DNA of 64,000 nucleotides from IMGVR_UViG_3300010885_076238:62001-126000, one strand, 5' to 3'; numbered from the stretch's first letter, positions 1,934 to 62,423 are shown. A program made the numbers and translations. Notes: generated from the sequence alone by a model not told the origin.

Positions 1934-2382
1934 AATATCACACCAGCCCAGAAAGATTCAGCTTTCTGAAAAACAATAAAGAAAATGACTTGTCTTTAAC
2001 TCCTGAACAAAAACAAGAATGGGCAAGTTATGTTGAGCAATGTCGTGCTAATGACAGCATTCCAAACACAACTCAGCCATGTTTGGAACATGATTTGAGA
2101 TATTCTGAAACTATCGCCAATAAATGCAAGAATTCAGACAGCTACAGTCAAAATTTGTACGCAGCATTGTGCAACAATGAGTTTGTTAAGAATGATGTAA
2201 ACTGGCATTGTTCTTGGCGACATTCGGGCGGTATTGTTTCTAATTTAAGAGAGGAAGGCGACTATATTGATTGGTACTGTAGTGGAATTCATGTCGAATC
2301 TCCTTTTGTTGAAGAAGGAAGCATTACCGAAGAAGTTCGTAAAGATTTAGAAAATTTAGGCTGGATAGCAAAAAATGAATAG
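1930..2382 (+). CDS. hypothetical phage protein
   Basis: SWRHSGGIVSNLR...DYIDWYCSG block; coupled ORF. Confidence 0.75.
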   Translation: MKYHTSPERFSFLKNNKENDLSLTPEQKQEWASYVEQCRANDSIPNTTQPCLEHDLRYSETIANKCKNSDSYSQNLYAALCNNEFVKNDVNWHCSWRHSGGIVSNLREEGDYIDWYCSGIHVESPFVEEGSITEEVRKDLENLGWIAKNE

Positions 2383-2713
2383 GCGCGACTTACTACAGTG
2401 GATTACAGGACTTTTGGCCGGAACTTTGGCCGGAACTGAACCAAAGACCATATCTACCCCCAAAACGCTTCCTATGCCCAAAGATGCGGGGTTTAACGGT
2501 TCGTTCATGCTCTATAGGAACAAGTGGACATCAGGATATAATGTAAAATTGGCCAGATGTTTGGCCGTTAACCCAAATAGATTTAAAATACCCCCAAATC
2601 AAATGGTCGTGTGGCAATCCGAAGACAAATCCATAGAAAAATTAGTGTATCGAAACAACGAAGGAAAATTATTTTCCTTAGAATTCGCCCCAATGGAAGA
2701 AACTATGATTTAG
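2375..2713 (+). CDS. hypothetical protein with twin-arginine-like N-terminus
   Basis: MNRRDLL followed by a hydrophobic stretch WITGLLAGTLA. Confidence 0.65.
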   Translation: MNRRDLLQWITGLLAGTLAGTEPKTISTPKTLPMPKDAGFNGSFMLYRNKWTSGYNVKLARCLAVNPNRFKIPPNQMVVWQSEDKSIEKLVYRNNEGKLFSLEFAPMEETMI

Positions 2714-2909
2714 CTTTCGATTCGGCCTCAGTTTTTAATTTCTCTAACTCGGACTTCAACTTTTTTACTTCTGCTCTTAGTCCTGCCGCTTCGCTTTCTA
2801 ATTTATTAATGGCATTAATAATTCGGTAAATTTGTGAACTTTTTTCTTGTTCGTAGGTGTTAGCTGCCAATCTCTTTAGTTCCATCATGTCATCATTTGA
2901 AAGGTACAT
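2703..2909 (-). CDS. hypothetical coiled-coil protein
   Basis: AGGAG RBS upstream on minus strand; heptad-like C-terminus. Confidence 0.65.
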   Translation of the reverse strand: MYLSNDDMMELKRLAANTYEQEKSSQIYRIINAINKLESEAAGLRAEVKKLKSELEKLKTEAESKAKS

Positions 2910-2968
2910 AAAATTCTCCTGTTTGTTTATTAGAGTAATAATTATTTAAAATAACAAGAATTTGCTTA

Positions 2969-2993
2969 AATATTTTTTTGTGTCTTTCGTTAT
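2969..2993 (+). promoter_or_regulatory. phage promoter motif AATATT-N13-CGTTAT
   Basis: One of about 30 fixed-spacing copies; followed by AAGGAG and ATG 3015. Confidence 0.7.
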
Positions 2994-3014
2994 CATATCA
3001 ACCAAGGAGATAAA

Positions 3015-3221
3015 ATGAAGACATCCAAGTTGATTAGCTACATGAAAGAAAGAGCGACTTTTGAAAATGTTGGTTGGGAAATGCCCGATGAGATTCTTGA
3101 AAATTTCTTTGTTCAAAAGGGAACTAGAATCTTTTTTGGTGTGATCCTTGACGATTTGGGCAACATTCTTAAAGATCAGCAACAGCCGGAGTTTTACACT
3201 TCTTATTGTGAGAGAAATTAA
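3015..3221 (+). CDS. hypothetical protein
   Basis: AAGGAG RBS and promoter motif upstream. Confidence 0.7.
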   Translation: MKTSKLISYMKERATFENVGWEMPDEILENFFVQKGTRIFFGVILDDLGNILKDQQQPEFYTSYCERN

Positions 3222-3316
3222 ATAATGACAAGGACAAGGATATTCCTTTTTATTGTTTTTGTAATGGGTTGTGCATTTGCTTATTTGATTGATTCAAAGT
3301 AAATAGAAAGAAAAAA

Positions 3317-4591
3317 ATGTTTGAAAAGTTATCTGATCTTGTTCAAGACTTGAAGGCCACTTCATCTTCAAATTCTAAAGTTTCAATTATTAGAGATTAT
3401 TTAAAAGAAGACAAAGACCTTCAAAATATTTTTTATTATGTCTATCATCCCTTTTATCAATTTTATGTTTCAAGTGATAACTGTAAGAAAAATAAAGAAT
3501 TAAAAAATAAGCAGCATGACTGTATTTTTAAATTGTTAGATGATCTTAGAAATAGAAAAATCACTGGTCACGATGCTGTTAGTGCCATTAATGGGTATTT
3601 AGAAAATCATGATCACGTTTCGCTTGTTCATGATATCTTGGACAAAGATTTAAAAATTAGAGCTGCCGATAAATTAATTAATAAAGCAATCCCCGGATTG
3701 ATCCCGGAATTTGAGGTTGCTTTAGCTGAGAAATACACACCGGAAATTATGAATCTCAATGAAGATTGGTATGCGAGTCATAAGCTCGACGGTTGCCGCT
3801 GTGTTTGTGTAGTCGATGATTCTGGTGTGGTGAGCATCTCAAGGCAGGGGAAAATTTTTACAACCTTGGGCTTGGTTGAAGATGCCATTAAAAACTTAAA
3901 CATTAAAAATGTTGTTTTTGACGGAGAGATTTGTCTACTTGATGAAAACGGAAAAGAAAGCTTTCAAGGAATAATGAAGCTTATTCGCAAGAAAGATCAT
4001 GTTATTCAAAACCCTGTTTATAAAATTTTTGATTTGCTAACTACAGGAGAATTTTATAATAAGAAAAGTGAAAGAAAACTATCTGATCGACTTGAATTTC
4101 TCAAGAGTGTTATCAAGGAAGATTCAAATCCTTGTTTGACTGTTTTAGAGCAAATTAAAATTAAAAATAACGAGCATTTTGAAGAGTTAACAAAGAAAGC
4201 AACAGATAGTGGGTGGGAAGGACTAATTCTCAGAAAAGACACAGGATACGCAGGAAAGAGGAGCAAGGATTTATTGAAGTATAAAAACTTCTTTGATGCT
4301 GAGTATGTTGTTGAAGACCTTGAATTCGGCCCGTTCAGATATGTTTTTGAAAACAAGGAAAAAGAAGAGATTATGCTTAGTTGTGCAACAATCAAGCATA
4401 AAGACAATGTCGTGAGAGTGGGCAGCGGCTTTACAATTGATCAAAGAAAGCATTATTACAAAAATCCTCAGGATCTTTTGGGAAAAACAATCAATGTTCA
4501 GTATTTTGAAGAAACCTTCAATCAAGAAGGAGGAATAAGTCTCAGGTTTCCTGTTGTTAAACACATTTATGAAAATGGTAGGGATACATAA
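3317..4591 (+). CDS. lig: ATP-dependent DNA ligase
   Basis: HKLDGCRC (I), FDGEI (III), KIFD (IIIa), WEGLILRK (IV), LLKYK (V), OB-fold VGSGFT and SLRFPV. Confidence 0.95.
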   Translation: MFEKLSDLVQDLKATSSSNSKVSIIRDYLKEDKDLQNIFYYVYHPFYQFYVSSDNCKKNKELKNKQHDCIFKLLDDLRNRKITGHDAVSAINGYLENHDHVSLVHDILDKDLKIRAADKLINKAIPGLIPEFEVALAEKYTPEIMNLNEDWYASHKLDGCRCVCVVDDSGVVSISRQGKIFTTLGLVEDAIKNLNIKNVVFDGEICLLDENGKESFQGIMKLIRKKDHVIQNPVYKIFDLLTTGEFYNKKSERKLSDRLEFLKSVIKEDSNPCLTVLEQIKIKNNEHFEELTKKATDSGWEGLILRKDTGYAGKRSKDLLKYKNFFDAEYVVEDLEFGPFRYVFENKEKEEIMLSCATIKHKDNVVRVGSGFTIDQRKHYYKNPQDLLGKTINVQYFEETFNQEGGISLRFPVVKHIYENGRDT

Positions 4592-4598
4592 ATATAAC

Positions 4599-4970
4599 AT
4601 GGAAGACATTGATGACTTTTGCCAAAGAATTAGAAATTTTGTGTTCGATAGAATTAGACACACCATAGCAAAGATGCTAAATATTGATGTCAATTCTTTA
4701 GACGACGCAGATAAATATATTTCTCAAAAAGAAACAATAATGATTTTTAATGATGTCGTAGAAAATTTTGATGGAAAAATTTCTCAAAAAAAAATTGTTA
4801 AAATTTGTGAAGACATAAATAAAAGAATTTTTAGTAACATTCTCAATAAGATGTCGATTGACGGAGATTTGGATTGTGCGTGGTCAGAGGCAGATCAGTC
4901 GTTTGTTTTTAAAGTTTCACAAGAGGGTCAAAAAAAGGGATTATCTATTCCCAAGATATTTGAAAAATGA
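4599..4970 (+). CDS. hypothetical protein
   Basis: ATG 4599 after ligase stop; ATAAATA at 4588-4594. Confidence 0.7.
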   Translation: MEDIDDFCQRIRNFVFDRIRHTIAKMLNIDVNSLDDADKYISQKETIMIFNDVVENFDGKISQKKIVKICEDINKRIFSNILNKMSIDGDLDCAWSEADQSFVFKVSQEGQKKGLSIPKIFEK

Positions 4971-5072
4971 AAAAGTTTTTTATATTGCTTCGTTTTGCCT
5001 TTAGTATTATAATGATATTTTATGGAATTATGTTGATTTCTTTTTTTACCTATAAAGAAATTATAGAAAAAT

Positions 5073-5309
5073 ATGCAAACCAATTATGAAGAAAAAGCTG
5101 CCTTCAAGGCTTTTTTTGTTGCTTTTTTTGCTCTTTTACTGATTTTAACAAGTGGAATTTATTTGAACTATAAATATCCACTTGTTCCGCCAATTTCAGA
5201 TGACCCAGTAAAAGCTGCGTACGATAAAAGTTCAAACAACAAAATTGAAATCAAAATAAATCAAATTGAAAAAAGATTAGATAAATTAGAGAAACTAAAG
5301 ATTAGATAA
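5073..5309 (+). CDS. small membrane protein
   Basis: One hydrophobic helix FFVAFFALLLILTSGIYL. Confidence 0.6.
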   Translation: MQTNYEEKAAFKAFFVAFFALLLILTSGIYLNYKYPLVPPISDDPVKAAYDKSSNNKIEIKINQIEKRLDKLEKLKIR

Positions 5310-6032
5310 AGAGTTCAATCTTTTAATGGATTTTTCATAATATTCTTTTGACAATTCGCATCCTAAAAAAGTGCGATTTGTATTTTTGCAAGCGATCATA
5401 GTAGACCCAGACCCACTAAATATGTCTAAAACTTTATTTTTTTTATTTGTATATGCTTTTATTATTCTTTCCAAAATTAGAAGCGGCTTTTGTGTTGGAT
5501 GCCAATTGACATACTCTTTGGATTTTGTATGATTATTTTTTTCCCATACACAAGTGGGGATTGTTCCTCTCTCGTACGGTTCGCCAGTTCTTATATTTAT
5601 TTTTTGTTTTCTTTCAACCATAACATCATCGGAATTAAATAAAAATTTATTTCCTTTGGAATAACACCAAATGTATTCGTGTTTTCTAGCAAAATTAACT
5701 TTTGATCTTCCTCCCCAATTATACGACCAAATAATTTCATTTTGTGATTTTGCTTCTTTTATATTGTTAATTATATTTAATTTGTACTTAATAAATGTGT
5801 CTGTTTTTAGTGTTCCGAAAACAGCAAACATTCTGTTTTCTTTCAGAACTCTGAAACATTCCTTTGTCCAAACTTCACACCAATCTAGGTATTCCCCTTC
5901 GCTTTTCCATTGCGAATCCCATCCTTTTCCTCCATCGAATCCTATGAAATATGGGGGATCGGTAAGAATTAAGTCAATGGAATTTGATCTTATTTTTTTT
6001 AAATAACTAATACAATCAATGTTTTCCAGCAT
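5295..6032 (-). CDS. amino (N6A/N4C) DNA methyltransferase, beta class
   Basis: DLILTDPPY (motif IV) precedes HPTQKP and VLDIFSGSGST (motif I), the beta-class order; no cognate endonuclease adjacent. Confidence 0.92.
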   Translation of the reverse strand: MLENIDCISYLKKIRSNSIDLILTDPPYFIGFDGGKGWDSQWKSEGEYLDWCEVWTKECFRVLKENRMFAVFGTLKTDTFIKYKLNIINNIKEAKSQNEIIWSYNWGGRSKVNFARKHEYIWCYSKGNKFLFNSDDVMVERKQKINIRTGEPYERGTIPTCVWEKNNHTKSKEYVNWHPTQKPLLILERIIKAYTNKKNKVLDIFSGSGSTMIACKNTNRTFLGCELSKEYYEKSIKRLNSLSNL

Positions 6033-6050
6033 TAATTAAAGGAGTTAAAT

Positions 6051-6227
6051 ATGATTAGTTTTTCACTTAGAGAACCTATAAATTATCAAAAAATTTGCCA
6101 AGAAATTGATAGGCTATTAAAAAAAGAAATTAATAGCCAGAAACAAGCAGAATCTACGCTACTTGTTATTAAATTAATCGAAACAAAAGAAGTAGAAGAA
6201 ATTAAAAAAATAGAGTTAAACGCATAG
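6051..6227 (+). CDS. hypothetical protein (58 aa, below ORF-track cutoff)
   Basis: AAAGGAG RBS, ATG 6051 to TAG 6227. Confidence 0.55.
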   Translation: MISFSLREPINYQKICQEIDRLLKKEINSQKQAESTLLVIKLIETKEVEEIKKIELNA

Positions 6228-6302
6228 CCGCACAAAATAAATCTTGATTTTAATTAAATTTTATTTATTACCAAGCGTTATGATGGTAGGGAGTATAAAT
6301 TT

Positions 6303-6938
6303 ATGGTTCGTTTGCCAAAGTACAAAAAAGATGCCGAAGCAGCATACAAATATGCGAAAAAAAATAATATAATTTTTTCTTCAGAGGAAGAAAACGTACT
6401 AACACAAAACCCAGAAGTAGCAATCAAATATGCTTTGAATCTTAAGAAAGAAAGACTATCTGATTTTGTTAACAAAAAGGTTTTTGAATATTATTCTTCA
6501 TTGATCAAGAAAACTCAAAAAAATAAACACTCTTCCGTCTTGCATAATTTTTTTGACTATTTGAAAATGATCAAGGACGTTCCTGATTTTTGTAAAAATG
6601 AAATTTTAGAAAATATTGACCCTGAGCTTTTATATATTTTTGCACAAATTTTAGACAACAAATTAACTGAAAAATACGAAAAAAGAATGTTTCAAAAATG
6701 CCAACAACATAATAATCTTTGGCCTTTGGTAGAATATCAATTTTACTTGAAAACAAAACTACCAGACTATATGCACAATTTTATGATAGCTAAAAATTTA
6801 GAATCGAATTGTAATTCTTCAAAAAATGCCATAGAGGCATATTTTCTAAACCTAAAAGATATTAAAAATATCTTGTTAAAAATTTCTTTGGTATTTGGAA
6901 AAGAAACCAAACTTAAAGAAATTATAGAAGAGCTATGA
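6303..6938 (+). CDS. LP-HN-M family protein (degenerate helical repeats)
   Basis: PKYKKDAEAAYKYA N-motif, KLPDYMHNFMIA, terminal TKLKEIIEEL; promoter motif at 6257-6281. Confidence 0.75.
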   Translation: MVRLPKYKKDAEAAYKYAKKNNIIFSSEEENVLTQNPEVAIKYALNLKKERLSDFVNKKVFEYYSSLIKKTQKNKHSSVLHNFFDYLKMIKDVPDFCKNEILENIDPELLYIFAQILDNKLTEKYEKRMFQKCQQHNNLWPLVEYQFYLKTKLPDYMHNFMIAKNLESNCNSSKNAIEAYFLNLKDIKNILLKISLVFGKETKLKEIIEEL

Positions 6939-7166
6939 GTATCAGTAAGAACACTCTTTTTGGTCTCGTTCTGTCTTTTCAATGAGTTCGTTGATAAACT
7001 CAAAATCGTAAACTCTTATTTTGTATTCTTCCATGATTTTGGCAATTTTTTCACTGAGTTCGTTGTTTTGCATCTTGCATTCTCCTAGGTCTTGCCTTCA
7101 TTGAAGATATCCTAGCTGATTTTAGATTGACTGTAAAGACCTGCTTTAAAAATATTAAAAAATTAA

Positions 7167-7191
7167 AATAATAATTGGCTGATTCCGTTAT
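7167..7191 (+). promoter_or_regulatory. phage promoter motif AATAAT-N13-CGTTAT
   Basis: Exact consensus, upstream of the 7266-10502 operon. Confidence 0.7.
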
Positions 7192-7265
7192 CTCTTTGTC
7201 CGCTTGCTTTACAAGTCTAATTTCTGGTCTATATTTATTCCAGCTTCACTAACAAAGGAGAAATC

Positions 7266-7454
7266 ATGAAAGTTTTTACTCTTGAAAATGTTGTTGATCG
7301 ACTCGTCAACGCAAAATCCCCGGCCCACAAAGCCCATGCTACTCGCGCACTCAAAACCTATGCTGTAATGAGAGCATTAGAGATTGGATCCACTCCATCC
7401 AGAGTAATCGCTGGGGTTCGTGCGGTTGTTACAAAGCGCAAGCAAATTGCCTAA
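7266..7454 (+). CDS. small basic hypothetical protein
   Basis: AAGGAG RBS; Lys/Arg/Ala-rich 62 aa. Confidence 0.7.
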   Translation: MKVFTLENVVDRLVNAKSPAHKAHATRALKTYAVMRALEIGSTPSRVIAGVRAVVTKRKQIA

Positions 7455-7477
7455 AAAATTAGAAAAGAAAAGCAGGG

Positions 7478-8230
7478 ATGCTTATGAAAACAATGTCGGT
7501 ATCTAGACAACCAAAATATTGTGAGTCTCCACATAAGTTTATGGCTAGAGATATAATCCCAAGCCTTTATAGACTTTTTAGTGGAAATGAATCAATTCCT
7601 GAAGGAAAACAATATTTGACTTTAGCCTCCATACAGGACAAAAGTCCTCGTAGCGAAGTTAATCAAATGGTTAATTCCGGCGTGTGTACCCGCAAACAAT
7701 TTGTAGGAATTGATAACAACAAAAAATACATCAAAAGAAATAAAAAAGCCCATCCAGAAGCAACTTTTATTTGTGAAGATTGGAATGTTTTGTTGGCAAC
7801 TAGACAATTCGATCCTGCGATTGTTTATTTGGACTCTACTCATTTCGGTGACAAATTACCAGCACTTAGAACCTTAAAGAATACGTTAGACATTTGCAAA
7901 AATGAAACATTAGTTGTTTGCAATGTTATGGAATCAAACCCCCGATCAGGATTAGGTGAGTTCCTAGATTCTAAAGTCTTACTGGAAAGCCTTCTTTATA
8001 GAGAGATTCCAGCAAAATATAAAGACTGGAACAGGAGCAGAGATTGCAAATCTTGGAGTCAGGAAGAAAACTCAAATATTTATATACCAAGCTACACATA
8101 TCAGACGGCCAAGACCTTAATGAAAAGTTATATTTTTTATAAAGGTTTTATGCCTACAGAAGAAGAAATCGAAAGTTTATTTTCTGAATTTAAAATTTGG
8201 TGTAATGATATTGAGAAAACATTTTGCTAA
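7478..8230 (+). CDS. SAM-dependent methyltransferase-like (Rossmann-fold) protein
   Basis: QFVGID (motif II-like), FICEDW (III-like), IVYLDST (IV-like); motif I is degenerate. Confidence 0.45.
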   Translation: MLMKTMSVSRQPKYCESPHKFMARDIIPSLYRLFSGNESIPEGKQYLTLASIQDKSPRSEVNQMVNSGVCTRKQFVGIDNNKKYIKRNKKAHPEATFICEDWNVLLATRQFDPAIVYLDSTHFGDKLPALRTLKNTLDICKNETLVVCNVMESNPRSGLGEFLDSKVLLESLLYREIPAKYKDWNRSRDCKSWSQEENSNIYIPSYTYQTAKTLMKSYIFYKGFMPTEEEIESLFSEFKIWCNDIEKTFC

Positions 8231-8249
8231 AAGAAAGAAGAAAGACATC

Positions 8250-10502: not shown

Positions 10503-10509
10503 GGTCAAA

Positions 10510-11133
10510 ATGATATCTAGCATAAATACAAGCTATGATTCTTTATGCAGATTGTTTGATTTTAGTAACGGCAAAATTTCAAGTAATAAAAAATTATTAC
10601 TTAGTCTTGCAAGAAGAGGGAAGCCTAAGCCAAGTTACAAAACAAGCTTGTATGTTTACTTATGCAGTTGCACAAATAAGAATAATTGTCTTTACGACGA
10701 TGTTTTTAGCGAAAGCATTAGACAAATTAGACCAGACTGGTTTGTAAGAAGACAAGAAACAACAAGGAAGAAAAAAGAAAATCTAATAAAAATTGCAAAA
10801 AAGATGATGCCTAGACCTAATCATTCTGATGCCTCTTATAGAGATCTTTTTTCTTATACTAATAAAAATAGCAATGTTTATGACGAAGATTTTGATTCTA
10901 TTATCAGGAAACTCAGACCAGATTGGTTTTTTACTAGAACTCACTTATCGGAAATAAAGAAACAAAACATACTAAAATTAGCAAAAGAAAGAAAGCCTAA
11001 GCCTAGTAGAAATCATGTTCTTGGAATAGCAATCAAAAATTATACAAACAAAAGCAGCCCAGCCTATGATTCTAACTTTGAAGTTGAGTTAAAAAAACTC
11101 AGACCAGATTGGTTTAAAAATTCGGTAAAATAA
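10510..11133 (+). CDS. three-repeat protein (helicase-associated HA-like units)
   Basis: Three ~60-aa units ending TNKxxxxYDxxFxxxxxxxRPDWF; N-terminal YDSLCRLFDFS. Confidence 0.65.
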   Translation: MISSINTSYDSLCRLFDFSNGKISSNKKLLLSLARRGKPKPSYKTSLYVYLCSCTNKNNCLYDDVFSESIRQIRPDWFVRRQETTRKKKENLIKIAKKMMPRPNHSDASYRDLFSYTNKNSNVYDEDFDSIIRKLRPDWFFTRTHLSEIKKQNILKLAKERKPKPSRNHVLGIAIKNYTNKSSPAYDSNFEVELKKLRPDWFKNSVK

Positions 11134-11153
11134 TTTCTTGATCAATGCGTTAT
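11129..11153 (+). promoter_or_regulatory. phage promoter motif AATAAT-N13-CGTTAT
   Basis: Exact consensus, then AAGGAG and ATG 11173. Confidence 0.7.
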
Positions 11154-11172
11154 AGAAACAAGGAGAAATCCA

Positions 11173-13796: not shown

Positions 13797-13838
13797 ACTC
13801 GTCTTTACCAATAAATTAACTTGACCTACAATGATAGC

Positions 13839-14438: not shown

Positions 14439-14462
14439 CTTGTGATAACTGTAGGATACAAT
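14435..14462 (+). promoter_or_regulatory. sigma70-like promoter
   Basis: TTGACT-N16-TACAAT upstream of the HTH gene at 14481. Confidence 0.5.
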
Positions 14463-14480
14463 CAAATTTGACACAGCAAA

Positions 14481-15206: not shown

Positions 15207-15232
15207 AACTAAAATGCACTTTTTAGTTTCAA
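15203..15232. repeat. perfect 12-bp inverted repeat (operator or hairpin)
   Basis: TTGAAACTAAAA-tgcact-TTTTAGTTTCAA. Confidence 0.8.
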
Positions 15233-15251
15233 CTCTAAGGAGAGAGATAGA

Positions 15252-15629
15252 ATGAGAATTTTACTCGTTTGTTTAGTGGTTGGATTGTTTTGTTCTGACG
15301 CTCATGCAAAGCCCAGAAAAACTTATAATTATTCGACACCAACGTATTCGAATAATTATTCTATTCCTAACGCCAAAACTTCAACTTATACTTCATTAGT
15401 TGAAAATGGCGGATCCGATCAGGCCAGATGCCAAGCAGAAGCAGATCATATGGCTGCAAATAATATTACGGGCCATGTATGGAGCTGTATCGGTAGATTT
15501 GAAGGGGTTGGCTATGGGTCATCTCCTAATTGCAAAACTTGCACCCCTAGCAGTAGCATGACTCCAACCGGAGATGCCTCTGCTCAGGGCAGAAATGGTA
15601 TGTGGTACAGAGTTCGTTCGTGGAGATAA
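15252..15629 (+). CDS. secreted minimal CAP/SCP-like protein
   Basis: Signal peptide MRILLVCLVVGLFCSDAHA; AxHMA...GH...EGVG...G(x)nWY pattern. Confidence 0.55.
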   Translation: MRILLVCLVVGLFCSDAHAKPRKTYNYSTPTYSNNYSIPNAKTSTYTSLVENGGSDQARCQAEADHMAANNITGHVWSCIGRFEGVGYGSSPNCKTCTPSSSMTPTGDASAQGRNGMWYRVRSWR

Positions 15630-15637
15630 GTTCTTAA

Positions 15638-15687: not shown

Positions 15688-15728
15688 AATTTGTCACTAT
15701 ATAATTCTTCACAAGGAGTTAATTTATT

Positions 15729-18084: not shown

Positions 18085-18105
18085 CATTAATTTAGAAAGA
18101 AATTT

Positions 18106-18381: not shown

Positions 18382-18382
18382 A

Positions 18383-19425: not shown

Positions 19426-20466
19426 ATGAAGCTATTTATTGAAACTCTTGAAGCACGAACCGTTTTGTCTGTAGTGTTTTTTGATAAAGAAACCAAAGCA
19501 GCGGTGGCAAATGCTTATAAAGACAAAATTATTTCAAGAGATGAGCTTGTTTCTATTTTTAGGCAGACCACCGATCAGAACACAATCACCGCCAATGAAC
19601 TATCAGATTTGAGAAAAGTTACGACGTTGAGAATGCCAGAGCATGTTCGATACTTGGCTAAAGATGTCGTTTTTGCGAATATTGCAAATGCAAAGTTTCA
19701 AGGCAATACTTTGGGCAACTTGACGGCAAATTCTCCCGCTCAAAAGATTAATAATCTTATAGATAAATGGTTTTATGGAAAAGACCGTCCAGCCTTGCCT
19801 AACAATCTATCATATAAAGAAAGCAAATTGCCTTTATTCGACAATGGAGCGACAAGCACGGATGTTATTCAAGGTCAACTTGGAGATTGTTATTTATTGG
19901 CATCATTAGCCTCTGTTGCAGATAAATTAGGCATAAGAACTTCGTTTATCGACAATGGCGACAGAACATGGACGATTAGGCTTTATGATTTGAATGGCAT
20001 ACGCAAGGTGGATTATATCACCGTTGACAGTTACCTTCCGGTTGATGCGAATGGGTCATCCATTTATGCAAATTTTGATAAAGAATTATGGGTTGCACTA
20101 ATCGAAAAAGCATATGCACAATATAATGAAACGGGTGGCACATGGCATTTAGAAAAGTCAAATAGTTATCAAGCAATAGTGGGTGGCTATCCTGTTCTTG
20201 CACTAGAAAGCATAACGGGAGTGCCTACTAAATGTAATTTTTTCTCTGATGCTATGGCTCAAACAACATTGAACAAATCACTTTATCGCGGCGATGCTGT
20301 TGTTTTATCTGCCCCAGTTAAAGATAAAGATGTTTCTCATTCTTATTATGTAAAATCCTATTTAAATGGCTTGTATTATTTGTATAATCCTTGGGGCTTT
20401 AGTCATTTAGAAGTTACTTGGGATCAATTGAAAACAAACATAAACTTTGTTATAGAGGCAAAATGA
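19426..20466 (+). CDS. calpain-like (peptidase C2) cysteine protease with planctomycete-type LExRxVLS N-terminal motif
   Basis: QGQLGDCYLLA (Cys), LWVALIEKAYA, SHSY (His), YNPWG (Asn); N-terminus MKLFIETLEARTVLS. Confidence 0.88.
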   Translation: MKLFIETLEARTVLSVVFFDKETKAAVANAYKDKIISRDELVSIFRQTTDQNTITANELSDLRKVTTLRMPEHVRYLAKDVVFANIANAKFQGNTLGNLTANSPAQKINNLIDKWFYGKDRPALPNNLSYKESKLPLFDNGATSTDVIQGQLGDCYLLASLASVADKLGIRTSFIDNGDRTWTIRLYDLNGIRKVDYITVDSYLPVDANGSSIYANFDKELWVALIEKAYAQYNETGGTWHLEKSNSYQAIVGGYPVLALESITGVPTKCNFFSDAMAQTTLNKSLYRGDAVVLSAPVKDKDVSHSYYVKSYLNGLYYLYNPWGFSHLEVTWDQLKTNINFVIEAK

Positions 20467-20822
20467 CTCCTTTTTTAGCTTATCAAAAAATCGTTCTTGC
20501 AATGAACAACCTTCATGACAAAAGCGATAAATTCGCCAAAAGAATAAATAAAAAATCGAAAAAGTATAAATATTTTCGCATTCCAGAGTACGAAAAGTTT
20601 TTAATAAATGACGTTAAATTTTCTTATTATTATGCTAGGGATGTGGTGCATGGAAAATTGCCAGAGGACATGCACAATTTAATGCTTTGTGAAGCATTAG
20701 CTAATTCAAATAACGCTTATGTTAAAAACTATTTTGAAATTTGTAAAGGAAATTTTCCAATCACGAATCAAAATCTTGGCTTGAACTCATTGAAAATGGA
20801 AAGACAACTTTATGGAACATAA
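20463..20822 (+). CDS. short LP-HN-M family protein
   Basis: YYARDVVHGKLPEDMHNLML. Confidence 0.75.
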   Translation: MTPFLAYQKIVLAMNNLHDKSDKFAKRINKKSKKYKYFRIPEYEKFLINDVKFSYYYARDVVHGKLPEDMHNLMLCEALANSNNAYVKNYFEICKGNFPITNQNLGLNSLKMERQLYGT

Positions 20823-21630
20823 AATAATTACGCATGATGGCAAGGCTCATCAAGACGATTTTCTAGGAACTTGCGTTTGTATTTTTAAATTGAACGCACC
20901 TGCATTTAGAAAAAAATTTACATCTGAAGAGTTGTCTGATCCTAGTTGTTGGATTTTAGACCAAGGAAGAAGTTTTGAATCAGAGCTTCATAATTTTGAC
21001 CATCATCAATTAGAAGAAGAGATTTGTGCTTTTACAATGGTTTTAGACCATTTTTATGGCAAAGAATATAGAAAATTTTTACCACAACTTAAATACGTTG
21101 AAATATTTGATAGTTACGGCCCCTCTGCTGCCGCCAAGTTCGCAGAAATGCCAGTAGATAGTATTGAAATTATTTCTTCTCCTGTTCACACTTCAATGAT
21201 GAGAGTTTTTTCTAAAATAGATGGAGAAATATTAAATCCAATTTATTCGGTAATGAAAGAAATTGGAAGGGATATTTGCGAACAAATAGAAAATGTTGAT
21301 TTGTTTTTCAAAATTCTTGGAGACTCAAGATTTTTTGATTATAACGGAATTAAAATTTTTGATGTGACACAGTGCGAGATGCCACAAGGATTTAAGCACG
21401 ATCAACTTCCAACTAAAATGTTTTGTAAAACAAGAGGGCTAGAGCCTCAACTAATTCTTACAAAAGATTCAAGGCAAAATGGATTTAGACTTGTTAGCAT
21501 TAATACAAATTCTATCAAGTTCTTACAGAATGAGTTGTCTTATTTTACTCACAACAGTGGTTTTTTGACTAACTTTTTTAAATACGAAGACTATAGAAAA
21601 ATAATAGATAATTATGTCGAAAAATTCTGA
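20812..21630 (+). CDS. MYG1-like (DHH-type) nuclease/hydrolase
   Basis: IITHDGKAHQDD, ILDQG, NFDHHQ. Confidence 0.75.
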   Translation: MEHKIITHDGKAHQDDFLGTCVCIFKLNAPAFRKKFTSEELSDPSCWILDQGRSFESELHNFDHHQLEEEICAFTMVLDHFYGKEYRKFLPQLKYVEIFDSYGPSAAAKFAEMPVDSIEIISSPVHTSMMRVFSKIDGEILNPIYSVMKEIGRDICEQIENVDLFFKILGDSRFFDYNGIKIFDVTQCEMPQGFKHDQLPTKMFCKTRGLEPQLILTKDSRQNGFRLVSINTNSIKFLQNELSYFTHNSGFLTNFFKYEDYRKIIDNYVEKF

Positions 21631-45432: not shown

Positions 45433-46521
45433 ATGCCTAATACAATTACGCCAATCGAAGCAGCAAGCCTTTACTTCAAAGAAGGCTCAAGTGATAAAGT
45501 TTACAATGCTACCTTGGAAAAAGAGGATGACAACAAATATGTTGTTAATTTCTCTTACGGCAGACGAGGAAGTGCATTGAAGTCTGGATCCAAAACCTCA
45601 AGCCCCGTTTCTCTTAAGGAAGCCAAGACCATCTTTGACAAAATTGTCAGAGAGAAAACTTCTAAGGGCTATAAATACGTCACCGACGCTGTTGCTAAAG
45701 AAATTCATGTTGCCGACAACCCACCGGACACGCCTACTGAGTCCAAGTGCGTTTTGCTCAATCCAATCAGCGAAGAAGAACTTGAAAAGTATTTGAACGA
45801 TCCAGATTGGATTGCCCAACAGAAAATTGATGGAGTTAGATTTATGCTCCATAAGGTAAAAGATAAAATTACTGCGTATAACCGTCGCGGACTTTACGCA
45901 AACATTCCAACCGATCTTTATAATTTCGCAAAAAACACTCAAGAAGATTTTCTAGTTGATGGAGAATTGATTGGAGATGTTTTTCACACCTTCGATATTC
46001 TTGAATATAACGGCAAAGACCTTACTCAAAACTCAGTTGTCGAAAGGCTTGAGGTTTTGTTGAATTGGGTTAATAATAATCCGTGCGAACTTGTAAAGTA
46101 TACAGAAACTCAAAGTTCAAGCAAAATTGAATTTTATGATCGTCTTGTTCGTGAAAACCAAGAAGGAATTGTTTTCAAACATAAAGACGCAAAGTATTAT
46201 GCTGGTAGGCCCGCCAGCGGTGGAAAGTATGTAAAATATAAGTTTTACAGCACTTGTAGTTGTGTCGTGACTGATGTGAATAATAAAAGAAGCGTAAGTA
46301 TAGGCTTGCTCAATGGCAAAAAATTAGTTGATGCTGGGAATGTTACTATTCCTATCAATTTTGAAATTCCTAATAAGGATGACATTGTGGAAGTCAGATA
46401 CCTTTATGCAAGAAAGCAGTCTGGCTCTCTTTATCAGCCTGTGTATCTTGGCAAAAGAACCGATATTGTTAGAGAAGATTGCAAGCAAAGTCAACTGAAG
46501 TATAAATTTGATGATGAATAA
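45433..46521 (+). CDS. WGR-domain + ATP-dependent DNA ligase
   Basis: WGR: SSDKVY...YGRRG...EKTSKGY; ligase: QKIDG, DGEL, FDIL, EGIVFK, KYKF; OB fold VEVRY, LYQPVY. Confidence 0.85.
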   Translation: MPNTITPIEAASLYFKEGSSDKVYNATLEKEDDNKYVVNFSYGRRGSALKSGSKTSSPVSLKEAKTIFDKIVREKTSKGYKYVTDAVAKEIHVADNPPDTPTESKCVLLNPISEEELEKYLNDPDWIAQQKIDGVRFMLHKVKDKITAYNRRGLYANIPTDLYNFAKNTQEDFLVDGELIGDVFHTFDILEYNGKDLTQNSVVERLEVLLNWVNNNPCELVKYTETQSSSKIEFYDRLVRENQEGIVFKHKDAKYYAGRPASGGKYVKYKFYSTCSCVVTDVNNKRSVSIGLLNGKKLVDAGNVTIPINFEIPNKDDIVEVRYLYARKQSGSLYQPVYLGKRTDIVREDCKQSQLKYKFDDE

Positions 46522-59676: not shown

Positions 59677-59723
59677 TTTTCCCAAATCGTTATCTCATAT
59701 CAACCCGACATAAGGATAAAACC

Positions 59724-60035
59724 ATGCCATTTGCTCTTTACCCCTCAAGAACGTACTCTCAAGATTTAGAACTGCTCAAAGAATTGGGCATAAAGCCATT
59801 CCAAGCACCAGACCAAGAAGAAATTCTAGTCGGTCAATATAAGCCGCCACACCACAAAAGAGCAAAAGTGAAAATATGGGTGAGTTGTATGCCTGCTCAA
59901 TTTTGGCGATTTGAGATCATCACAGAAGAAAACAAGAAGTTTGAAGTTCAAACCGGCTCAGGATGTTTATCAGAATATTGGCCGGGAGTATTGAAAATCG
60001 CAGAAGGTATGATGGAAGTGAAATCACTAAAATGA
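59724..60035 (+). CDS. hypothetical protein
   Basis: AAGGA RBS; variant promoter at 59669-59693. Confidence 0.7.
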   Translation: MPFALYPSRTYSQDLELLKELGIKPFQAPDQEEILVGQYKPPHHKRAKVKIWVSCMPAQFWRFEIITEENKKFEVQTGSGCLSEYWPGVLKIAEGMMEVKSLK

Positions 60036-60594
60036 ATTTATTAATTATTGTGGGTTATCTACCCAAATCTAACCTTTTATAATATTTAGCTGTGGGAAAC
60101 TAACCCATCTGCACAAATTTTGGTTCACCTAATAAATTAAATAATGGCTAATATTTAATTATAAAAATAGGGTCTAGTTAAATTAAGTAATAAATTTATT
60201 AAAAAAGGTAGTGCTTAGACCCCCTTTATAATTATAACTAACTAACGGGGAAATATAGTTTTCTAATAAAATCTAAGGGTTTCTAGTAAAATCTAGGTAA
60301 AAACAATGTATATTACTAATTATGAGTATCTGAGTGCGTTATTGAGTGTATTATTGATGGGAGTTGGGTTGGGGCTTTCATTGAGTAAGCTATTTTTTGT
60401 TGAATAATTAAAAAATAAGTAGAAAATAATCTCTTCTGCACAAATTTTGGTAGAGATTATATAGAAAATTAATAAAAAATAGTTTTTACGATATTGGGTG
60501 GTACTTTTTTTAAAGTAAAAAGACACCTGATGTTTATTTTGTATCTGGTATAATAATATTTTGTCTTATTCGATATGGTATACCGGAGGATAGA
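60036..60594. other. putative replication origin / strand-asymmetry switch
   Basis: Longest largely non-coding AT-rich tract; C>G to the left, G>C to the right; contains direct repeats, palindromes and hairpins. Confidence 0.55.
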
Positions 60595-61341
60595 ATGGCT
60601 AAGATAAACTTATTGGACTTTTCTAAGACGTTCTCGTTGAATAGTCATGGATACAGGGGAGATTACTGGTCTAATTCTACTATAGGCGCTCCTGCTGGCG
60701 GGGGTGCTTGGACATTATCTTCTGATTTTGAAGTTGCTGTTATCAATAAGATAGTTAGTTGGAGTGATTGGAAGGGTTGTCCTGAGAATATTTTGTTATT
60801 GGCCTTTTTTAAGAAGGCTGGGAAGTTATCGGACAACAGTATTTTCTACAGCAATATTAATTCAATAAAGAGACATAGTCATTGGCGTGGATGTGACGTA
60901 GTTTATACATTTTGTAGGAATGTATTGAAGGGTAGGTTGCCGAGTGGAGCGGAGGGGAATTTTCTTTCGGACATATGGGATAATCATTATGGTAGTAGGT
61001 TTGCATATAAGTATGCTAAGTATGTGATTCGTGGTCGGTTGCCTGTGGAGTATGAGAAGGGTTGTCAGAGTCTTGATTACTTGGGATTTTTGGAGACTAA
61101 GGGGATAGAGATTAGTGATATATTAATTAATAGTACGGCTTTATCCTTTAGTTACTACAAGTATTTTTATCATTTGCCTGAGGTTGTTCATAATTTTATG
61201 TTGGCGATGCAGTTGAGTGGAGATGGTTATGCTTCTGCTTATTTCCGTCAGCGTAATAAGGATGATGTTTTGATAAAGAACAGGTTGAAGATGGTTGATC
61301 CTAATAAGACTGTGAAGGAAGTATTGATGGGGTTGAAATGA
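60595..61341 (+). CDS. LP-HN-M family protein
   Basis: KGRLP/RGRLP units; HLPEVVHNFMLA; terminal KTVKEVL; GGAGG; promoter AATAAT-N13-CGATAT at 60552-60576. Confidence 0.75.
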   Translation: MAKINLLDFSKTFSLNSHGYRGDYWSNSTIGAPAGGGAWTLSSDFEVAVINKIVSWSDWKGCPENILLLAFFKKAGKLSDNSIFYSNINSIKRHSHWRGCDVVYTFCRNVLKGRLPSGAEGNFLSDIWDNHYGSRFAYKYAKYVIRGRLPVEYEKGCQSLDYLGFLETKGIEISDILINSTALSFSYYKYFYHLPEVVHNFMLAMQLSGDGYASAYFRQRNKDDVLIKNRLKMVDPNKTVKEVLMGLK

Positions 61342-61829
61342 ATATATTGGGTAGAATTTTATTGATAATTCCTTTTTGTAAATTGTTATATGATTACGTT
61401 CCTTCCTTGGACTTTTATAGTCTTAATTATCCTCTTGGAGCGTGGCTATTAATTTTATTGGGTTTGATTTCAATTTTATTTAATATTAGTAGAATATTGG
61501 GTATAATTTACATATTGGTTGGGTATGGGTTATACAGTTATTTTATACAGAGTGATATTTATAGTTTGTGGCCGGTTGGTGGTTTAATTTTATTAATTAG
61601 ATCAGATGTTAGTAAGAAGGTTGTGGAGAAGGTTGTTCCTGTAAAGGAGAAGGCAGTTGAGAAGGTAGTTCCTGCAAAGAAGAAAGTTGTAGTTGAGAAG
61701 GTAGTTCCTGTAAAAATTAATAAAACGAAGTCTGATGAATATTGGGAGAGGTATGACGCTCGCAATAAAAAGAATTTGTTTTTTAACTTAAAAGACAAAT
61801 TTAATAAATTATTGGTAGTGGGTAGGTAG
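61338..61829 (+). CDS. membrane protein with EKVVP repeats
   Basis: 3-4 TM segments, then three EKVVP units. Confidence 0.7.
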   Translation: MNILGRILLIIPFCKLLYDYVPSLDFYSLNYPLGAWLLILLGLISILFNISRILGIIYILVGYGLYSYFIQSDIYSLWPVGGLILLIRSDVSKKVVEKVVPVKEKAVEKVVPAKKKVVVEKVVPVKINKTKSDEYWERYDARNKKNLFFNLKDKFNKLLVVGR

Positions 61830-61949
61830 TAAATTAAAAAAAATTAAGTGTGGTTTTTTGCGGGGAAAAGTGAGCTTTACAAGAAAAAAAATTGGGCTAA
61901 AATGTTTGTTGTGTTTACGGTAAAATTTTTTTCACATGGAGGCTAAATT

Positions 61950-62423
61950 ATGCCCGCTGGAAGACCAAAGGGATCGAGTGGAACTAACAAGAGTTCGATT
62001 ATTCGGGAATACATTAAAGCTAATCCCACAGCGACTACGAATGAAGTGATGGAGGCGTTGGGTCAGAAGGGCATTGAGGTTAGTCAAGCTCTTGTGGCTG
62101 GAGTACGTTCTAGGGAGATGCGTGGCCCTGGGAATAAGAGTCGCAAGCGTGGTGAGATCACGGTTAGCGAATTGAATAGTATTAATGCGATGGTGGAGAA
62201 GTTTGATGATCGTTCTGTAATTATGAATATTATAGACGACATGACGACCTTGATTAAGGAAATTGGTGGTATTGATCGTTTTGAAGAAGCGATGAAGGAG
62301 TTCCAGAATTGGAAGCCTGAGTCTGAATCTTTGAAGGCGGAAGCTGCTTCTGACATATCTGGTGATGACGATGATGAGGATTCGGATGATGATGAGGACG
62401 AGGATGAAGACGAGGACGAATGA
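61950..62423 (+). CDS. AT-hook + winged-helix nucleoid-type protein with acidic tail
   Basis: GRPKGS; NKSSIIREYIKANPTATTNEVMEAL...GIEVS; poly-D/E tail; TTTACA-N16-TAAAAT at 61876-61903; GGAGG. Confidence 0.7.
   Translation: MPAGRPKGSSGTNKSSIIREYIKANPTATTNEVMEALGQKGIEVSQALVAGVRSREMRGPGNKSRKRGEITVSELNSINAMVEKFDDRSVIMNIIDDMTTLIKEIGGIDRFEEAMKEFQNWKPESESLKAEAASDISGDDDDEDSDDDEDEDEDEDE

What the first reader, a model, noticed from the sequence alone, without database searches (positions are those of the whole stretch)
2375..62423. Converging signs of a Planctomycetota host for a large T4-like phage
Seen: an LExRxVLS N-terminal motif on the calpain (19426), a secreted minimal CAP-like protein (15252), an NKSxxIRxYxxANP nucleoid-type protein (61950), a MYG1-like protein (20812), a small HG/GSSRGG hydrolase, a WGR-ligase and an MNRRDLL leader (2375). 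From recall, not a search, the first and third patterns are characteristic of planctomycete proteomes (Planc_extracel / LEPR-xLL motif). Very few planctomycete phages are described. The phage is far more AT-rich than typical planctomycetes.
Basis: inference. Interest (0 to 1): 0.7.

Follow-up and report, generated by a model that had tools for sequence, protein, structure and literature searches.

The report
Freshwater jumbo phage, likely Pirellulaceae host
The window lies in a 204-kb AT-rich freshwater phage that is not T4-like, and three independent gene-level signals point to a planctomycete host, probably of the family Pirellulaceae, a group with almost no described phages.

Summary
The "T4-like" label fails. 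Pfam Gp23 and Portal_T4 find nothing in the 204,311-bp record, and none of 336 ORFs matches 100 kb of T4 that holds its structural and replication genes.

The host idea gains independent support.
- **Calpain (19426-20466).** It starts with MKLFIETLEARTVLS, the published planctomycete-specific export signal (RRLxxExLExRxLLA). Every phage-type homologue examined keeps the core of this motif. Upstream of the calpain module, 13 of the 27 homologues labelled Planctomycetota match it, and so does one MAG labelled Hyphomicrobiales. None of 47 cyanobacterial homologues does.
- **"NKS" protein (61950-62423).** This is a two-domain helix-turn-helix (HTH)-like protein conserved across the phage clade. 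Its profile hits 42 of 81 genomes in the family of a freshwater Pirellula MAG. It hits 6 of 251 Planctomycetota overall, 1 of 201 Myxococcota, 0 of 251 Bacteroidota and no true match in 151 Cyanobacteriota.
- **Phage tmRNA.** Its 5′ half aligns best to Planctomycetia tmRNAs.

Four points weigh against. The phage has 35% GC against about 51% in the Pirellula MAG. An AU test does not exclude a cyanobacterial affinity for the calpain core. No spacer-like DNA match was found. The MYG1, WGR-ligase, hydrolase and Tat-leader genes say nothing about the host.

Probability of a Planctomycetota host: about 0.7.

The parts
19426..20466 (+). Calpain-family cysteine protease (346 aa) with conserved Cys155, His305 and Asn321. 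It is the main carrier of the host signal.
   Evidence: Peptidase_C2 E 1.4e-17. Conserved columns C155, H305, N321. Relatives in genomes are Cyanobacteriota, Planctomycetota and six otherwise-labelled MAGs.
19426..19470 (+). N-terminal MKLFIETLEARTVLS, a planctomycete-type export-signal motif (consensus RRLxxExLExRxLLA).
   Evidence: PF07595 E 0.0082, below cut-off. Sole hit in the phage genome, E 0.0049. Kept in all phage-type homologues examined. Described in the literature in PMC8567305.
19392..19419 (+). Promoter-like element GAAAATAAT-N13-CGTTAT, ending 6 nt before the calpain ATG. It overlaps the alternative upstream TTG at 19390, which favours 19426 as the true start.
   Evidence: One of 74 plus-strand copies of the motif, against 2 on the minus strand and about 8 in shuffles.
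61950..62423 (+). 'NKS' protein: an N-terminal three-helix HTH-like domain (NKSSIIREYIKANP...), a basic linker, a second helical domain and an acidic tail. It is conserved across the phage clade and has relatives in Pirellulaceae-type genomes.
   Evidence: family. (distribution). (weak likeness to the ArgR N-terminal domain).
15252..15629 (+). Small secreted protein with a Sec-like leader MRILLVCLVVGLFCSDAHA. Possibly a minimal CAP-like fold.
   Evidence: No Pfam hit. Atlas: viral clusters come first, then a CAP cluster (commonest phylum Planctomycetota) at 0.89. TM 0.54-0.56 to CAP proteins.
2375..2713 (+). 112-aa protein with a twin-arginine-like leader MNRRDLLQWITGLLAGTLAG. Not informative about the phylum.
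   Evidence: Only viral look-alike clusters.
20812..21630 (+). MYG1-like protein, with only the N-terminal part matching. A gene of this phage clade.
   Evidence: PF03690 E 4.4e-5 over residues 4-68. Found near the calpain gene in a related phage contig too.
33694..34152 (+). Small alpha/beta-hydrolase-like protein with HG and GSSRGG motifs.
   Evidence: UPF0227 E 1.1e-4, Abhydrolase_1 E 2.3e-3. GSSRGG located.
45433..46521 (+). WGR-domain ATP-dependent ligase.
   Evidence: DNA_ligase_A_M 2.1e-19, WGR 1.4e-8. Lies directly upstream of the calpain gene in a related phage contig.
236..1204 (+). RnlA-like RNA ligase 1, one of the few genes reminiscent of T4.
   Evidence: phrog_562 E 1e-64.
3317..4591 (+). 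ATP-dependent DNA ligase.
   Evidence: phrog_114 E 7.8e-83.

Best explanation
The window is the middle third of a 204-kb fragment of an AT-rich jumbo phage from freshwater. CheckV estimates the record as 88% complete. The phage belongs to an undescribed clade with related contigs of about 120-330 kb, and it is not T4-like.

Its host is most likely a member of the Planctomycetota, probably of the family that holds freshwater 'Pirellula' MAGs (Pirellulaceae; the family name is inferred from the NCBI label).

Shown: three host-linked traits.
1. A catalytically intact calpain-type protease begins with the planctomycete-specific N-terminal export signal.
2. A clade-wide small HTH-like protein has cellular relatives concentrated in that bacterial family.
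3. The phage tmRNA has a 5' half and tag that look planctomycete-like.

Inferred mechanism: during infection the calpain is recognised by the host's own surface-export route and acts on envelope or surface proteins. The 14 phage tRNAs, nearly all for A-ending codons that Planctomycetia rarely use, let a 35%-GC genome be translated in a host of about 50% GC or more.
For: **Motif.**
- The N-terminus MKLFIETLEARTVLS fits RRLxxExLExRxLLA. [quoted passage not shown]
- PF07595 is the only Pfam hit to the first 40 residues and the only hit in the phage genome (E 0.0049).
- The same model gives 29 and 35 hits in two Planctomycetia genomes, none in Calothrix, and none over the cut-off in 14 control genomes.
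- The ExLEx[RK] core is kept in every phage-type homologue examined, at 37-86% identity.
- Among cellular relatives, 13 of the 27 labelled Planctomycetota match the motif upstream of the calpain module, as does one MAG labelled Hyphomicrobiales. None of 47 cyanobacterial relatives does.

**Tree.** The phage clade (SH-aLRT 93) joins at the Planctomycetota end. The cyanobacteria are nested far inside.

**NKS profile.**
- It hits 42 of 81 genomes of the family of G001, best E 8.2e-18. N-terminal identity reaches 43-49%, for example NKSQAIREYYKANP.
- Across Planctomycetota it hits 6 of 251.
- In Myxococcota it hits 1 of 201.
- In Bacteroidota it hits 0 of 251.
- In Cyanobacteriota it has no N-terminal-domain match in 151 genomes.

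**tmRNA.**
- BLAST matches to the 5' domain or tag region appear only in the Planctomycetota sample. The Bacteroidota and Cyanobacteriota samples match only the 3' end.
- The phage tag GTNSYAMAA is closest to GNNSYAMAA of genome G110.
- In 5' 140-nt alignments, all Planctomycetota tmRNAs except Phycisphaera scored 103-126. Bacteroidota scored 74-92 and Cyanobacteria 62.

**tRNAs and source.** AGA makes up 56% of phage Arg codons against 2-9% in Planctomycetia. ATA makes up 36% of Ile codons against 4-9%. The sequence is held in freshwater metagenomes, as are the nearest Pirellula MAGs.
Against: - GC is 34.7% against about 51% in the Pirellula MAG and 62-63% in the other Planctomycetia sampled.
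- The AU test does not reject grouping the phage calpains with the cyanobacterial clade (p 0.107).
- The motif scores below Pfam's cut-off.
- At E<=0.001 only 1 of 86 Planctomycetota genomes has PF07595 hits, so the canonical motif is lineage-restricted.
- The genomes with the closest tmRNA tags (G110, G176, G193, G210) lack both the motif and the calpain. The signals therefore do not converge on one lineage.
- Bacteroidota also have similar tags, such as GNTQYAMAA.
- The best named cellular hit of glf is Bacteroidota, at 61% against 56-57% for Planctomycetota.
- No nucleotide or spacer-like match of window 1-20000 was found in 30 Planctomycetota genomes.
- Verrucomicrobiota, Actinomycetota and Pseudomonadota were not sampled.
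Confidence: 0.7

Rival explanations
1. The host is a cyanobacterium, filamentous or Pseudanabaena-like. The calpain came from cyanobacteria, whose GC of 36-42% matches the phage.
For: - 47 of the 80 best genomic relatives of the calpain are cyanobacterial, at 34-40% identity.
- Local GC of these cyanobacterial loci ranges 0.36-0.63, with many filamentous ones at 0.36-0.42.
- The AU test does not reject phage plus cyanobacterial calpains as one group (p 0.107).
Against: - No cyanobacterial homologue carries the LExR signal.
- The free tree puts the cyanobacteria far from the phage clade.
- The NKS N-terminal domain was not found in 151 cyanobacterial genomes.
- Cyanobacterial tmRNAs match only the last 30 nt and have long, unrelated tags.
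- PF07595 gives no hit in Calothrix.
- A set of tRNAs for A-ending codons would be of little use in a host of similarly low GC (inference).
Confidence: 0.07
2. The host is a low-GC freshwater member of the Bacteroidota. The planctomycete-like genes are older transfers.
For: - GC of about 35% is typical of many freshwater Bacteroidota (general knowledge).
- Bacteroidota tmRNA tags such as GNTQYAMAA resemble GTNSYAMAA.
- The best named cellular hit of the phage glf is Pontibacter, at 61%.
Against: - NKS family: 0 of 251 genomes.
- The tmRNA matches only at the 3' end in 250 genomes, and 5' alignment scores are lower.
- No Bacteroidota genome carries this calpain subfamily. The single MAG labelled 'Chitinophaga' draws the same phylum sample as the Pirellula MAG.
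- AGGAG is enriched 10-fold upstream of phage starts, whereas Bacteroidota largely lack Shine-Dalgarno-led initiation (general knowledge).
Confidence: 0.06
3. The host belongs to another phylum, unsampled or related, for example Verrucomicrobiota or Kiritimatiellota in the PVC group. The planctomycete-type signals would then reflect ancient gene exchange or a wider distribution of these families than the five samples show.
For: - Only four phyla plus one family were sampled, and the NKS family also occurs in 1 of 201 Myxococcota.
- The nearest Atlas clusters of the FGE-sulfatase protein are Kiritimatiellota, at a weak score of 0.83.
- The three signals do not converge on one planctomycete lineage.
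- The phage versions are only 27-49% identical to the cellular ones.
Against: - The motif is kept under selection across diverged phage calpains.
- The literature describes it as planctomycete-specific.
- The 52% prevalence of NKS relatives in one planctomycete family is a sharp peak.
Confidence: 0.15

Closest known systems
Metagenomic lake phages predicted to infect Planctomycetes (Jaffe et al. 2022, mSystems, PMC9040852)
   Same: They are freshwater phages with large genomes, including three circular genomes over 100 kb and fragments over 300 kb. Hosts were assigned from CRISPR spacers and gene content.
   Different: Those assignments include CRISPR spacers, and here none was obtained. Whether this phage is related to them could not be tested, because their sequences are not in the collections searched. 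The GenBank phage collection has no relative of the calpain, the NKS protein or the two largest window proteins.
T4-like phages (Straboviridae and the wider T4 superfamily)
   Same: Large genome, many tRNAs, an RnlA-type RNA ligase, a Dda-like helicase and an ATP-dependent DNA ligase.
   Different: Neither Pfam (Gp23, Portal_T4) nor tblastn against T4 detects gp23, gp20, gp17, gp18/19, gp43, gp41, gp44/45/62, UvsX or gp46/47. About 12% of the genome is missing, so structural genes may lie off the contig.
Planctomycete surface proteins with the RRLxxExLExRxLLA signal (Pfam PF07595; Studholme 2004; Tuwongella proteome, PMC8567305)
   Same: The motif sits at the extreme N-terminus and precedes an extracellular-type enzyme domain. 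Cellular calpains of Planctomycetota carry the same signal.
   Different: The phage form is minimal, with the motif followed at once by the calpain module. It lacks the basic RR stretch and scores below the Pfam cut-off. Cellular forms have 100-600 residues of extra domains between signal and protease. Export has not been shown for any phage copy.
AT-rich cyanomyophages that carry tRNAs and infect high-GC Synechococcus
   Same: A phage much more AT-rich than its presumed host, with tRNAs for codons common in the phage and rare in the host (the parallel comes from general knowledge).
   Different: A different phage lineage and a different host phylum. The host here is inferred, not known.

Membership tests
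T4-like phage (T4 core gene set) | gp23-type major capsid protein | tested here: not met
   PF07068 finds no match in the 204-kb record, but nothing rang in the controls either, so that search is weak. tblastn of all ORFs against T4 70-120 kb gives no hit at E<=1e-3. About 12% of the genome is missing.
T4-like phage (T4 core gene set) | gp20-type portal, gp17 terminase, gp18/gp19 tail sheath and tube | tested here: not met
   PF07230 finds no match. tblastn against the T4 structural region finds nothing.
T4-like phage (T4 core gene set) | T4-type replisome (gp43, gp41, gp44/62, gp45, UvsX, gp46/47) | tested here: not met
   tblastn against T4 1-50 kb gives no hit at E<=1e-3.
Calpain / Peptidase C2 | Match to the family model above the curated cut-off | tested here: met
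   PF00648, 64.2 bits against a cut-off of 23.8.
Calpain / Peptidase C2 | Catalytic Cys-His-Asn triad | tested here: met
   C155 is invariant. H305 and N321 are at least 90% conserved in a 20-sequence alignment and are present in the phage protein.
Planc_extracel N-terminal export signal (PF07595) | Score at or above Pfam's gathering cut-off | tested here: not met
   16.3 bits against 25.5 and 15.8 bits in the genome search. Several bona fide planctomycete homologues also score below the cut-off, at 11.9-23.2 bits.
Planc_extracel N-terminal export signal (PF07595) | Consensus L-x-x-E-x-L-E-x-R-x-x-L-[AS] at the extreme N-terminus of a secreted-type protein | tested here: met
   KLFIETLEARTVLS at residues 2-15. 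The consensus is quoted in PMC8567305.
Planc_extracel N-terminal export signal (PF07595) | Directs export in a planctomycete cell | not testable with these tools
   Needs a reporter fusion in a tractable planctomycete.
Phage of Planctomycetota (host assignment) | Direct link: CRISPR spacer, integrated copy, Hi-C, single cell or culture | tested here: inconclusive
   Only window 1-20000 was searched, against 30 Planctomycetota genomes, with no match. No spacer database was available.
Phage of Planctomycetota (host assignment) | Shared lineage-restricted genes or signals with the host group | tested here: met
   LExR signal. NKS family in 42 of 81 genomes of the G001 family, against 0-1 in three other phyla.
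MYG1 / UPF0160 | Full-length match to the family | tested here: inconclusive
   23.7 bits, just over the cut-off of 22.1, but only profile positions 1-66 of 318 match.
CAP / SCP superfamily | Match to PF00188 or a confident structural match | tested here: inconclusive
   No Pfam hit. Atlas feature score 0.89 and TM 0.54-0.56 over 95 residues.
tmRNA (RF00023) | Score above the Rfam gathering score, with a tag reading frame | tested here: met
   127.3 bits against 47. ARAGORN reads the tag GTNSYAMAA. The gene lies outside the window, at genome 184862-185213, minus strand.

The most novel reading that the evidence does not exclude
This record represents an undescribed clade of AT-rich freshwater jumbo phages (related contigs of about 120-330 kb) that infect Pirellulaceae. 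The clade has captured the planctomycete-specific surface-export signal to send a phage-encoded calpain protease to the host envelope. That would be the first viral use of this signal. The clade also carries a phage version of a Pirellulaceae-typical small HTH protein fused to an acidic tail, possibly to interfere with host DNA-binding proteins.
Probability: 0.45. Interest if true: 0.65.

Novelty: new member of a known kind. Interest (0 to 1): 0.55.

Why it matters
Planctomycetota are abundant in lakes and have an unusual cell envelope, yet almost no phage-host systems exist for them. Known links are a few metagenomic predictions (PMC9040852). A phage clade that can be tied to Pirellulaceae through a host-specific export signal gives two things. 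One is a concrete target for isolation or Hi-C confirmation. The other is a natural probe of the still uncharacterised RRLxxExLExRxLLA export route. The case also shows that short lineage-specific sorting signals on phage proteins can serve as host markers when GC and k-mer similarity fail, as here at 35% against about 51% GC.

Tried and rejected
- **T4 likeness.** Pfam Gp23 and Portal_T4, and tblastn of all ORFs against 100 kb of T4, all found nothing.
- **Structural genes.** PHROGs and Pfam on about 50 of the largest ORFs found no capsid, portal, terminase or polymerase. The structural module may lie beyond the contig ends.
- **GenBank phages.** Neither the two largest window proteins, the calpain nor the NKS protein has a relative there. 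The best helicase hits are Rhodothermus RM378 and Thermus MN1 at 32%, which tells nothing about the host.
- **glf as a host marker.** The best hits are related phage contigs. Cellular hits split between Bacteroidota (61%) and Planctomycetota (56-57%), so it was rejected as uninformative.
- **Other LExR-type proteins.** A regex scan of the phage proteome finds only the calpain. Four other IMG/VR records gave one weak hit.
- **Spacer-like DNA matches.** None for window 1-20000 in 30 Planctomycetota genomes.
- **Prevalence of PF07595.** Testing the phylum at E<=0.001 proved too strict to be useful: 1 of 86 genomes.
- **tmRNA tag.** A literature search for SYAMAA found nothing relevant. I first suspected a Bacteroidota origin from memory of Cytophaga and Chlorobi tags. 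Sampling showed the same tag type in Planctomycetota and a looser version in Bacteroidota.
- **Atlas look-ups.** The Tat-leader protein and the FGE-sulfatase protein gave no usable host signal.

Full report
**What the window is.** The window is bases 62001-126000 of an IMG/VR virus record of 204,311 bp. The record is linear, and CheckV estimates it as 88% complete. GC is 34.7%. The record carries 14 tRNA genes and a tmRNA, all outside the window. Public runs labelled freshwater metagenome hold the sequence. Proteins of the window have close relatives (60-86% identity) on unnamed metagenome contigs of about 120-330 kb, so the phage belongs to a clade of jumbo phages. One such contig is a 245-kb JGI record. 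A 30-kb contig from a relative keeps an RnlA-like ligase, MYG1, the WGR-ligase and the calpain in one neighbourhood.

**Check of the observations.** All seven listed features are present.
- The calpain at 19426-20466 matches Peptidase_C2 (E 1.4e-17). Its catalytic Cys155, His305 and Asn321 are conserved.
- The calpain begins MKLFIETLEARTVLS.
- The 125-aa protein at 15252 has a Sec-type leader and no Pfam hit. Its CAP likeness rests on Atlas leads only: feature score 0.89 and TM 0.54-0.56.
- The protein at 61950 carries NKSSIIREYIKANP.
- MYG1 (20812) matches just over the cut-off, but only across 65 residues. The GSSRGG hydrolase (33694) hits UPF0227 and alpha/beta-hydrolase models weakly.
- The WGR-ligase is at 45433-46521.
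- The MNRRDLL leader at 2375 looks like a twin-arginine signal and matches no family.

**Not T4-like.** Pfam Gp23 and Portal_T4 find nothing in the record. A tblastn of all 336 ORFs against T4 positions 1-50,000 and 70,001-120,000, which hold the replication and structural cores, gives no hit at E<=1e-3. PHROGs and Pfam on about 50 of the largest ORFs found several enzymes:
- an RnlA-like RNA ligase, an ATP-dependent DNA ligase, a WGR-ligase and a tRNA nucleotidyltransferase
- a Dda-like helicase and an SNF2-type helicase
- an N6/N4 DNA methylase
- glf, a carbamoyltransferase and glycosyltransferases
- a protein with an FGE-sulfatase domain

They found no capsid, portal, terminase or polymerase. 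The contig starts with tail-fibre-like proteins, so the structural module may lie in the missing part. The two largest window proteins, the calpain and the NKS protein have no relative among 50,697 GenBank phage records.

**Host signal 1: the export motif on the calpain.** PMC8567305 describes the motif RRLxxExLExRxLLA (Pfam PF07595, after Studholme 2004) as a planctomycetes-specific cell-surface signal. That paper found 52 proteins carrying it in Tuwongella.
- *Pfam match.* PF07595 is the only Pfam family that hits the first 40 residues of the phage calpain. The E-value is 0.0082 and the score 16.3 bits, below the 25.5-bit cut-off.
- *Genome searches.* It is the only hit in a six-frame search of the phage genome (E 0.0049). 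The same search gives 29 hits in a freshwater Pirellula MAG (G001), 35 in a Planctomycetia MAG and none in Calothrix. None of the 14 control genomes has a hit over the cut-off.
- *Named relatives.* The best named hits are Lacipirellulaceae, Planctomycetia and Pirellulaceae at 36-39% identity, with Calothrix and Rivularia at 34%.
- *Relatives in species genomes.* The 80 best relatives in 185,579 species genomes are 47 Cyanobacteriota, 27 Planctomycetota and 6 oddly labelled MAGs. One of those six, labelled 'Chitinophaga', draws exactly the same phylum sample as the Pirellula MAG. I therefore take it to belong to Planctomycetota.
- *Motif among relatives.* The ExLExR motif lies upstream of the protease module in 13 of the 27 Planctomycetota-labelled relatives and in one MAG labelled Hyphomicrobiales. 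It is in none of the 47 cyanobacterial relatives.
- *Motif among phages.* All short, AT-rich, phage-borne homologues keep it directly at the N-terminus, at 37-86% identity. Examples are IEQLEAKQMLS, FETLENRRLMA, FESLEPRSMMA, IETLEKKTLMA and IESLENKSMMA. Two of the carriers are IMG/VR contigs of 57 and 75 kb with 37-41% GC.
- *Reading.* This conservation argues that the motif is functional in the host.
- *Tree.* In a maximum-likelihood tree the phage forms make their own clade (SH-aLRT 93). It joins at the Planctomycetota end, next to a Pirellula group, while the cyanobacteria are nested deep inside. However, an AU test does not reject forcing the phage and cyanobacterial clades together (p 0.107, log-likelihood difference 20.5). 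The discriminating evidence is therefore the signal, not the protease core.

**Host signal 2: the NKS protein.** Its close homologues are all unnamed metagenome proteins, many on long phage-like contigs of up to about 490 kb.
- *Architecture.* The family has two three-helix domains, a basic linker and an acidic tail. The N-terminal domain weakly resembles the DNA-binding domain of ArgR/AhrC: Pfam E 0.004, Foldseek probability 0.84 with E 0.43.
- *Distribution.* A profile of the family was searched in six frames against sampled genomes:

| Sample | Genomes with a hit | Note |
|---|---|---|
| Family of G001 | 42 of 81 | best E 8.2e-18, matches span both domains |
| Planctomycetota | 6 of 251 | best E 1.1e-11, up to 8 copies per genome |
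| Myxococcota | 1 of 201 | |
| Bacteroidota | 0 of 251 | |
| Cyanobacteriota | 3 of 151 | weak hits to the linker only |

- *Sequence likeness.* Examples from the G001 family read NKSQAIREYYKANPKAKPKEV. They are 43-49% identical to the phage protein over the first 61 residues.
- *Resident genes.* The cellular copies lie in loci of 44-65% GC, far above the phage's 35%, so they appear to be resident genes.

**Host signal 3: the tmRNA.** The phage tmRNA scores 127 bits against Rfam and has the tag GTNSYAMAA.
- *BLAST by phylum.* Against 250 Planctomycetota genomes it matches the 5' domain or the tag region in about nine of them. The best match is 87% identity over positions 89-133. Against 250 Bacteroidota and 150 Cyanobacteriota it matches only the 3' tRNA-like end.
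- *Tags.* Planctomycetota tags include GNNSYAMAA, A[DE]NNSYAMAA, AEENLALAA and ANNNYALAA. Bacteroidota also have GNTQYAMAA, so the tag alone is not exclusive.
- *Alignment scores.* In global alignments of the first 140 nt, all Planctomycetota tmRNAs except Phycisphaera score 103-126. Bacteroidota score 74-92 and Cyanobacteria 62. This holds for the four Planctomycetia tmRNAs that were not chosen by similarity to the phage.
- *Discordance.* The genomes with the closest tags lack both the motif and the calpain. The three signals agree on the phylum but not on one lineage.

**GC gap and tRNAs.** Sampled DNA of the Pirellula MAG has 50.8% GC, and two other Planctomycetia have 62-63%. The phage tRNAs read AAA, AGA, GAA, AUA, CCA, GCA, CAA, GGA and ACA, among others. 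AGA makes up 56% of phage Arg codons against 2-9% in these genomes. ATA makes up 36% of Ile codons against 4-9%. This is what a phage much more AT-rich than its host would need. It fits any GC-richer host and is not specific to planctomycetes.

**Uninformative signs.** MYG1, the WGR-ligase, the hydrolase and the Tat leader carry no phylum signal. Three of them recur in relatives as clade genes. The best hits of glf are related phages, with Pontibacter (61%) and Pirellulales or Planctomycetia (56-57%) behind them. AGGAG is enriched 10-fold upstream of starts, which is weak evidence against a Bacteroidota host. No DNA match of window 1-20000 was found in 30 Planctomycetota genomes.

**Comparison with what is known.** Jaffe et al. 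2022 (PMC9040852) reconstructed lake phages, some over 100 kb, predicted from CRISPR spacers and gene content to infect Planctomycetes. A full-text search found no other paper using such phrases. The finding is therefore a new member of a known but very sparsely populated kind. What is new is a phage calpain that carries the host phylum's own export signal.

**Verdict.** The observations are real. 'T4-like' is wrong. A Planctomycetota host is the best-supported reading (about 0.7), probably Pirellulaceae (about 0.5). It remains an inference from shared lineage-restricted features, without a direct link.

Noticed in passing
window 2993-62877 (21 copies); whole genome 54.9-166 kb: A strongly over-represented, strand-specific promoter-like motif, AAAATAAT-N12-14-(T/C)CGTTAT. 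There are 74 copies on the plus strand and 2 on the minus strand, against about 8 in shuffles. Eleven copies end 6 nt before an ATG, which suggests leaderless or near-leaderless mRNAs. Others lie 17-20 nt upstream, with AGGAG in between. The exact motif is missing from the related phage contigs checked.
   Followed up: partly
genome 183421-187063 (L010:3421-7063), outside the window: A cluster of tRNA genes with a full-length tmRNA (Rfam 127 bits, tag GTNSYAMAA), next to a tRNA nucleotidyltransferase (genome 192021-193346). One tRNA match spans 136 nt (L010:4220-4355), which may indicate an intron or insert.
   Followed up: partly
window 30050-32536 (-) and 34149-36446 (-): The two largest proteins of the window (828 and 765 aa) lie on the minority strand. 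They have no significant Pfam or PHROG family and no relative in 50,697 GenBank phage records.
   Followed up: partly
genome 174425-176428 (-), L009:9425-11428: A 667-aa phage protein with an FGE-sulfatase (formylglycine-generating-enzyme-like) domain, E 3.8e-13. The nearest Atlas clusters are Kiritimatiellota, at a weak score of 0.83.
   Followed up: partly
genome 7149-8240 and 22298-23764 (L002, L003); 187086-189419 (L010): Sugar-modification genes: UDP-galactopyranose mutase (glf; 66-78% identical copies on related jumbo-phage contigs), a Nol-like carbamoyltransferase, and a 777-aa methyltransferase/glycosyltransferase.
   Followed up: partly
L015 (CAZIGZ010000046.1, MAG labelled 'uncultured Chitinophaga sp.'): This MAG's calpain nests among the Pirellula sequences, and its genome draws exactly the same phylum sample as the Pirellula MAG. 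The NCBI label is therefore probably wrong. The MAGs labelled Hyphomicrobiales (L069) and Alcaligenaceae (L081) also group with Planctomycetota in the tree.
   Followed up: partly
window 11173-12729 and 12726-13796: Two adjacent ORFs (518 and 356 aa) both give a weak hit to Pfam INT_rpt at a similar position, so they may be paralogues of unknown function.
   Followed up: no
window 41422-42345 and 51738-52691: Two proteins give weak RepB/ParB-type HTH hits (E 1.7e-4 and 2e-5). They may be partition-like or DNA-binding proteins.
   Followed up: no
window 5295-6032 (-): An N6/N4 DNA methyltransferase (PF01555, E 5.4e-50) encoded on the minus strand among plus-strand genes.
   Followed up: no
P0126/P0127 versus L014: The protein table lists longest contigs of 480,941 and 490,601 bp for NKS homologues, while the record fetched is 245,663 bp. 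The ratio is roughly two, so some 'megaphage' contigs may be head-to-tail concatemer assemblies.
   Followed up: no
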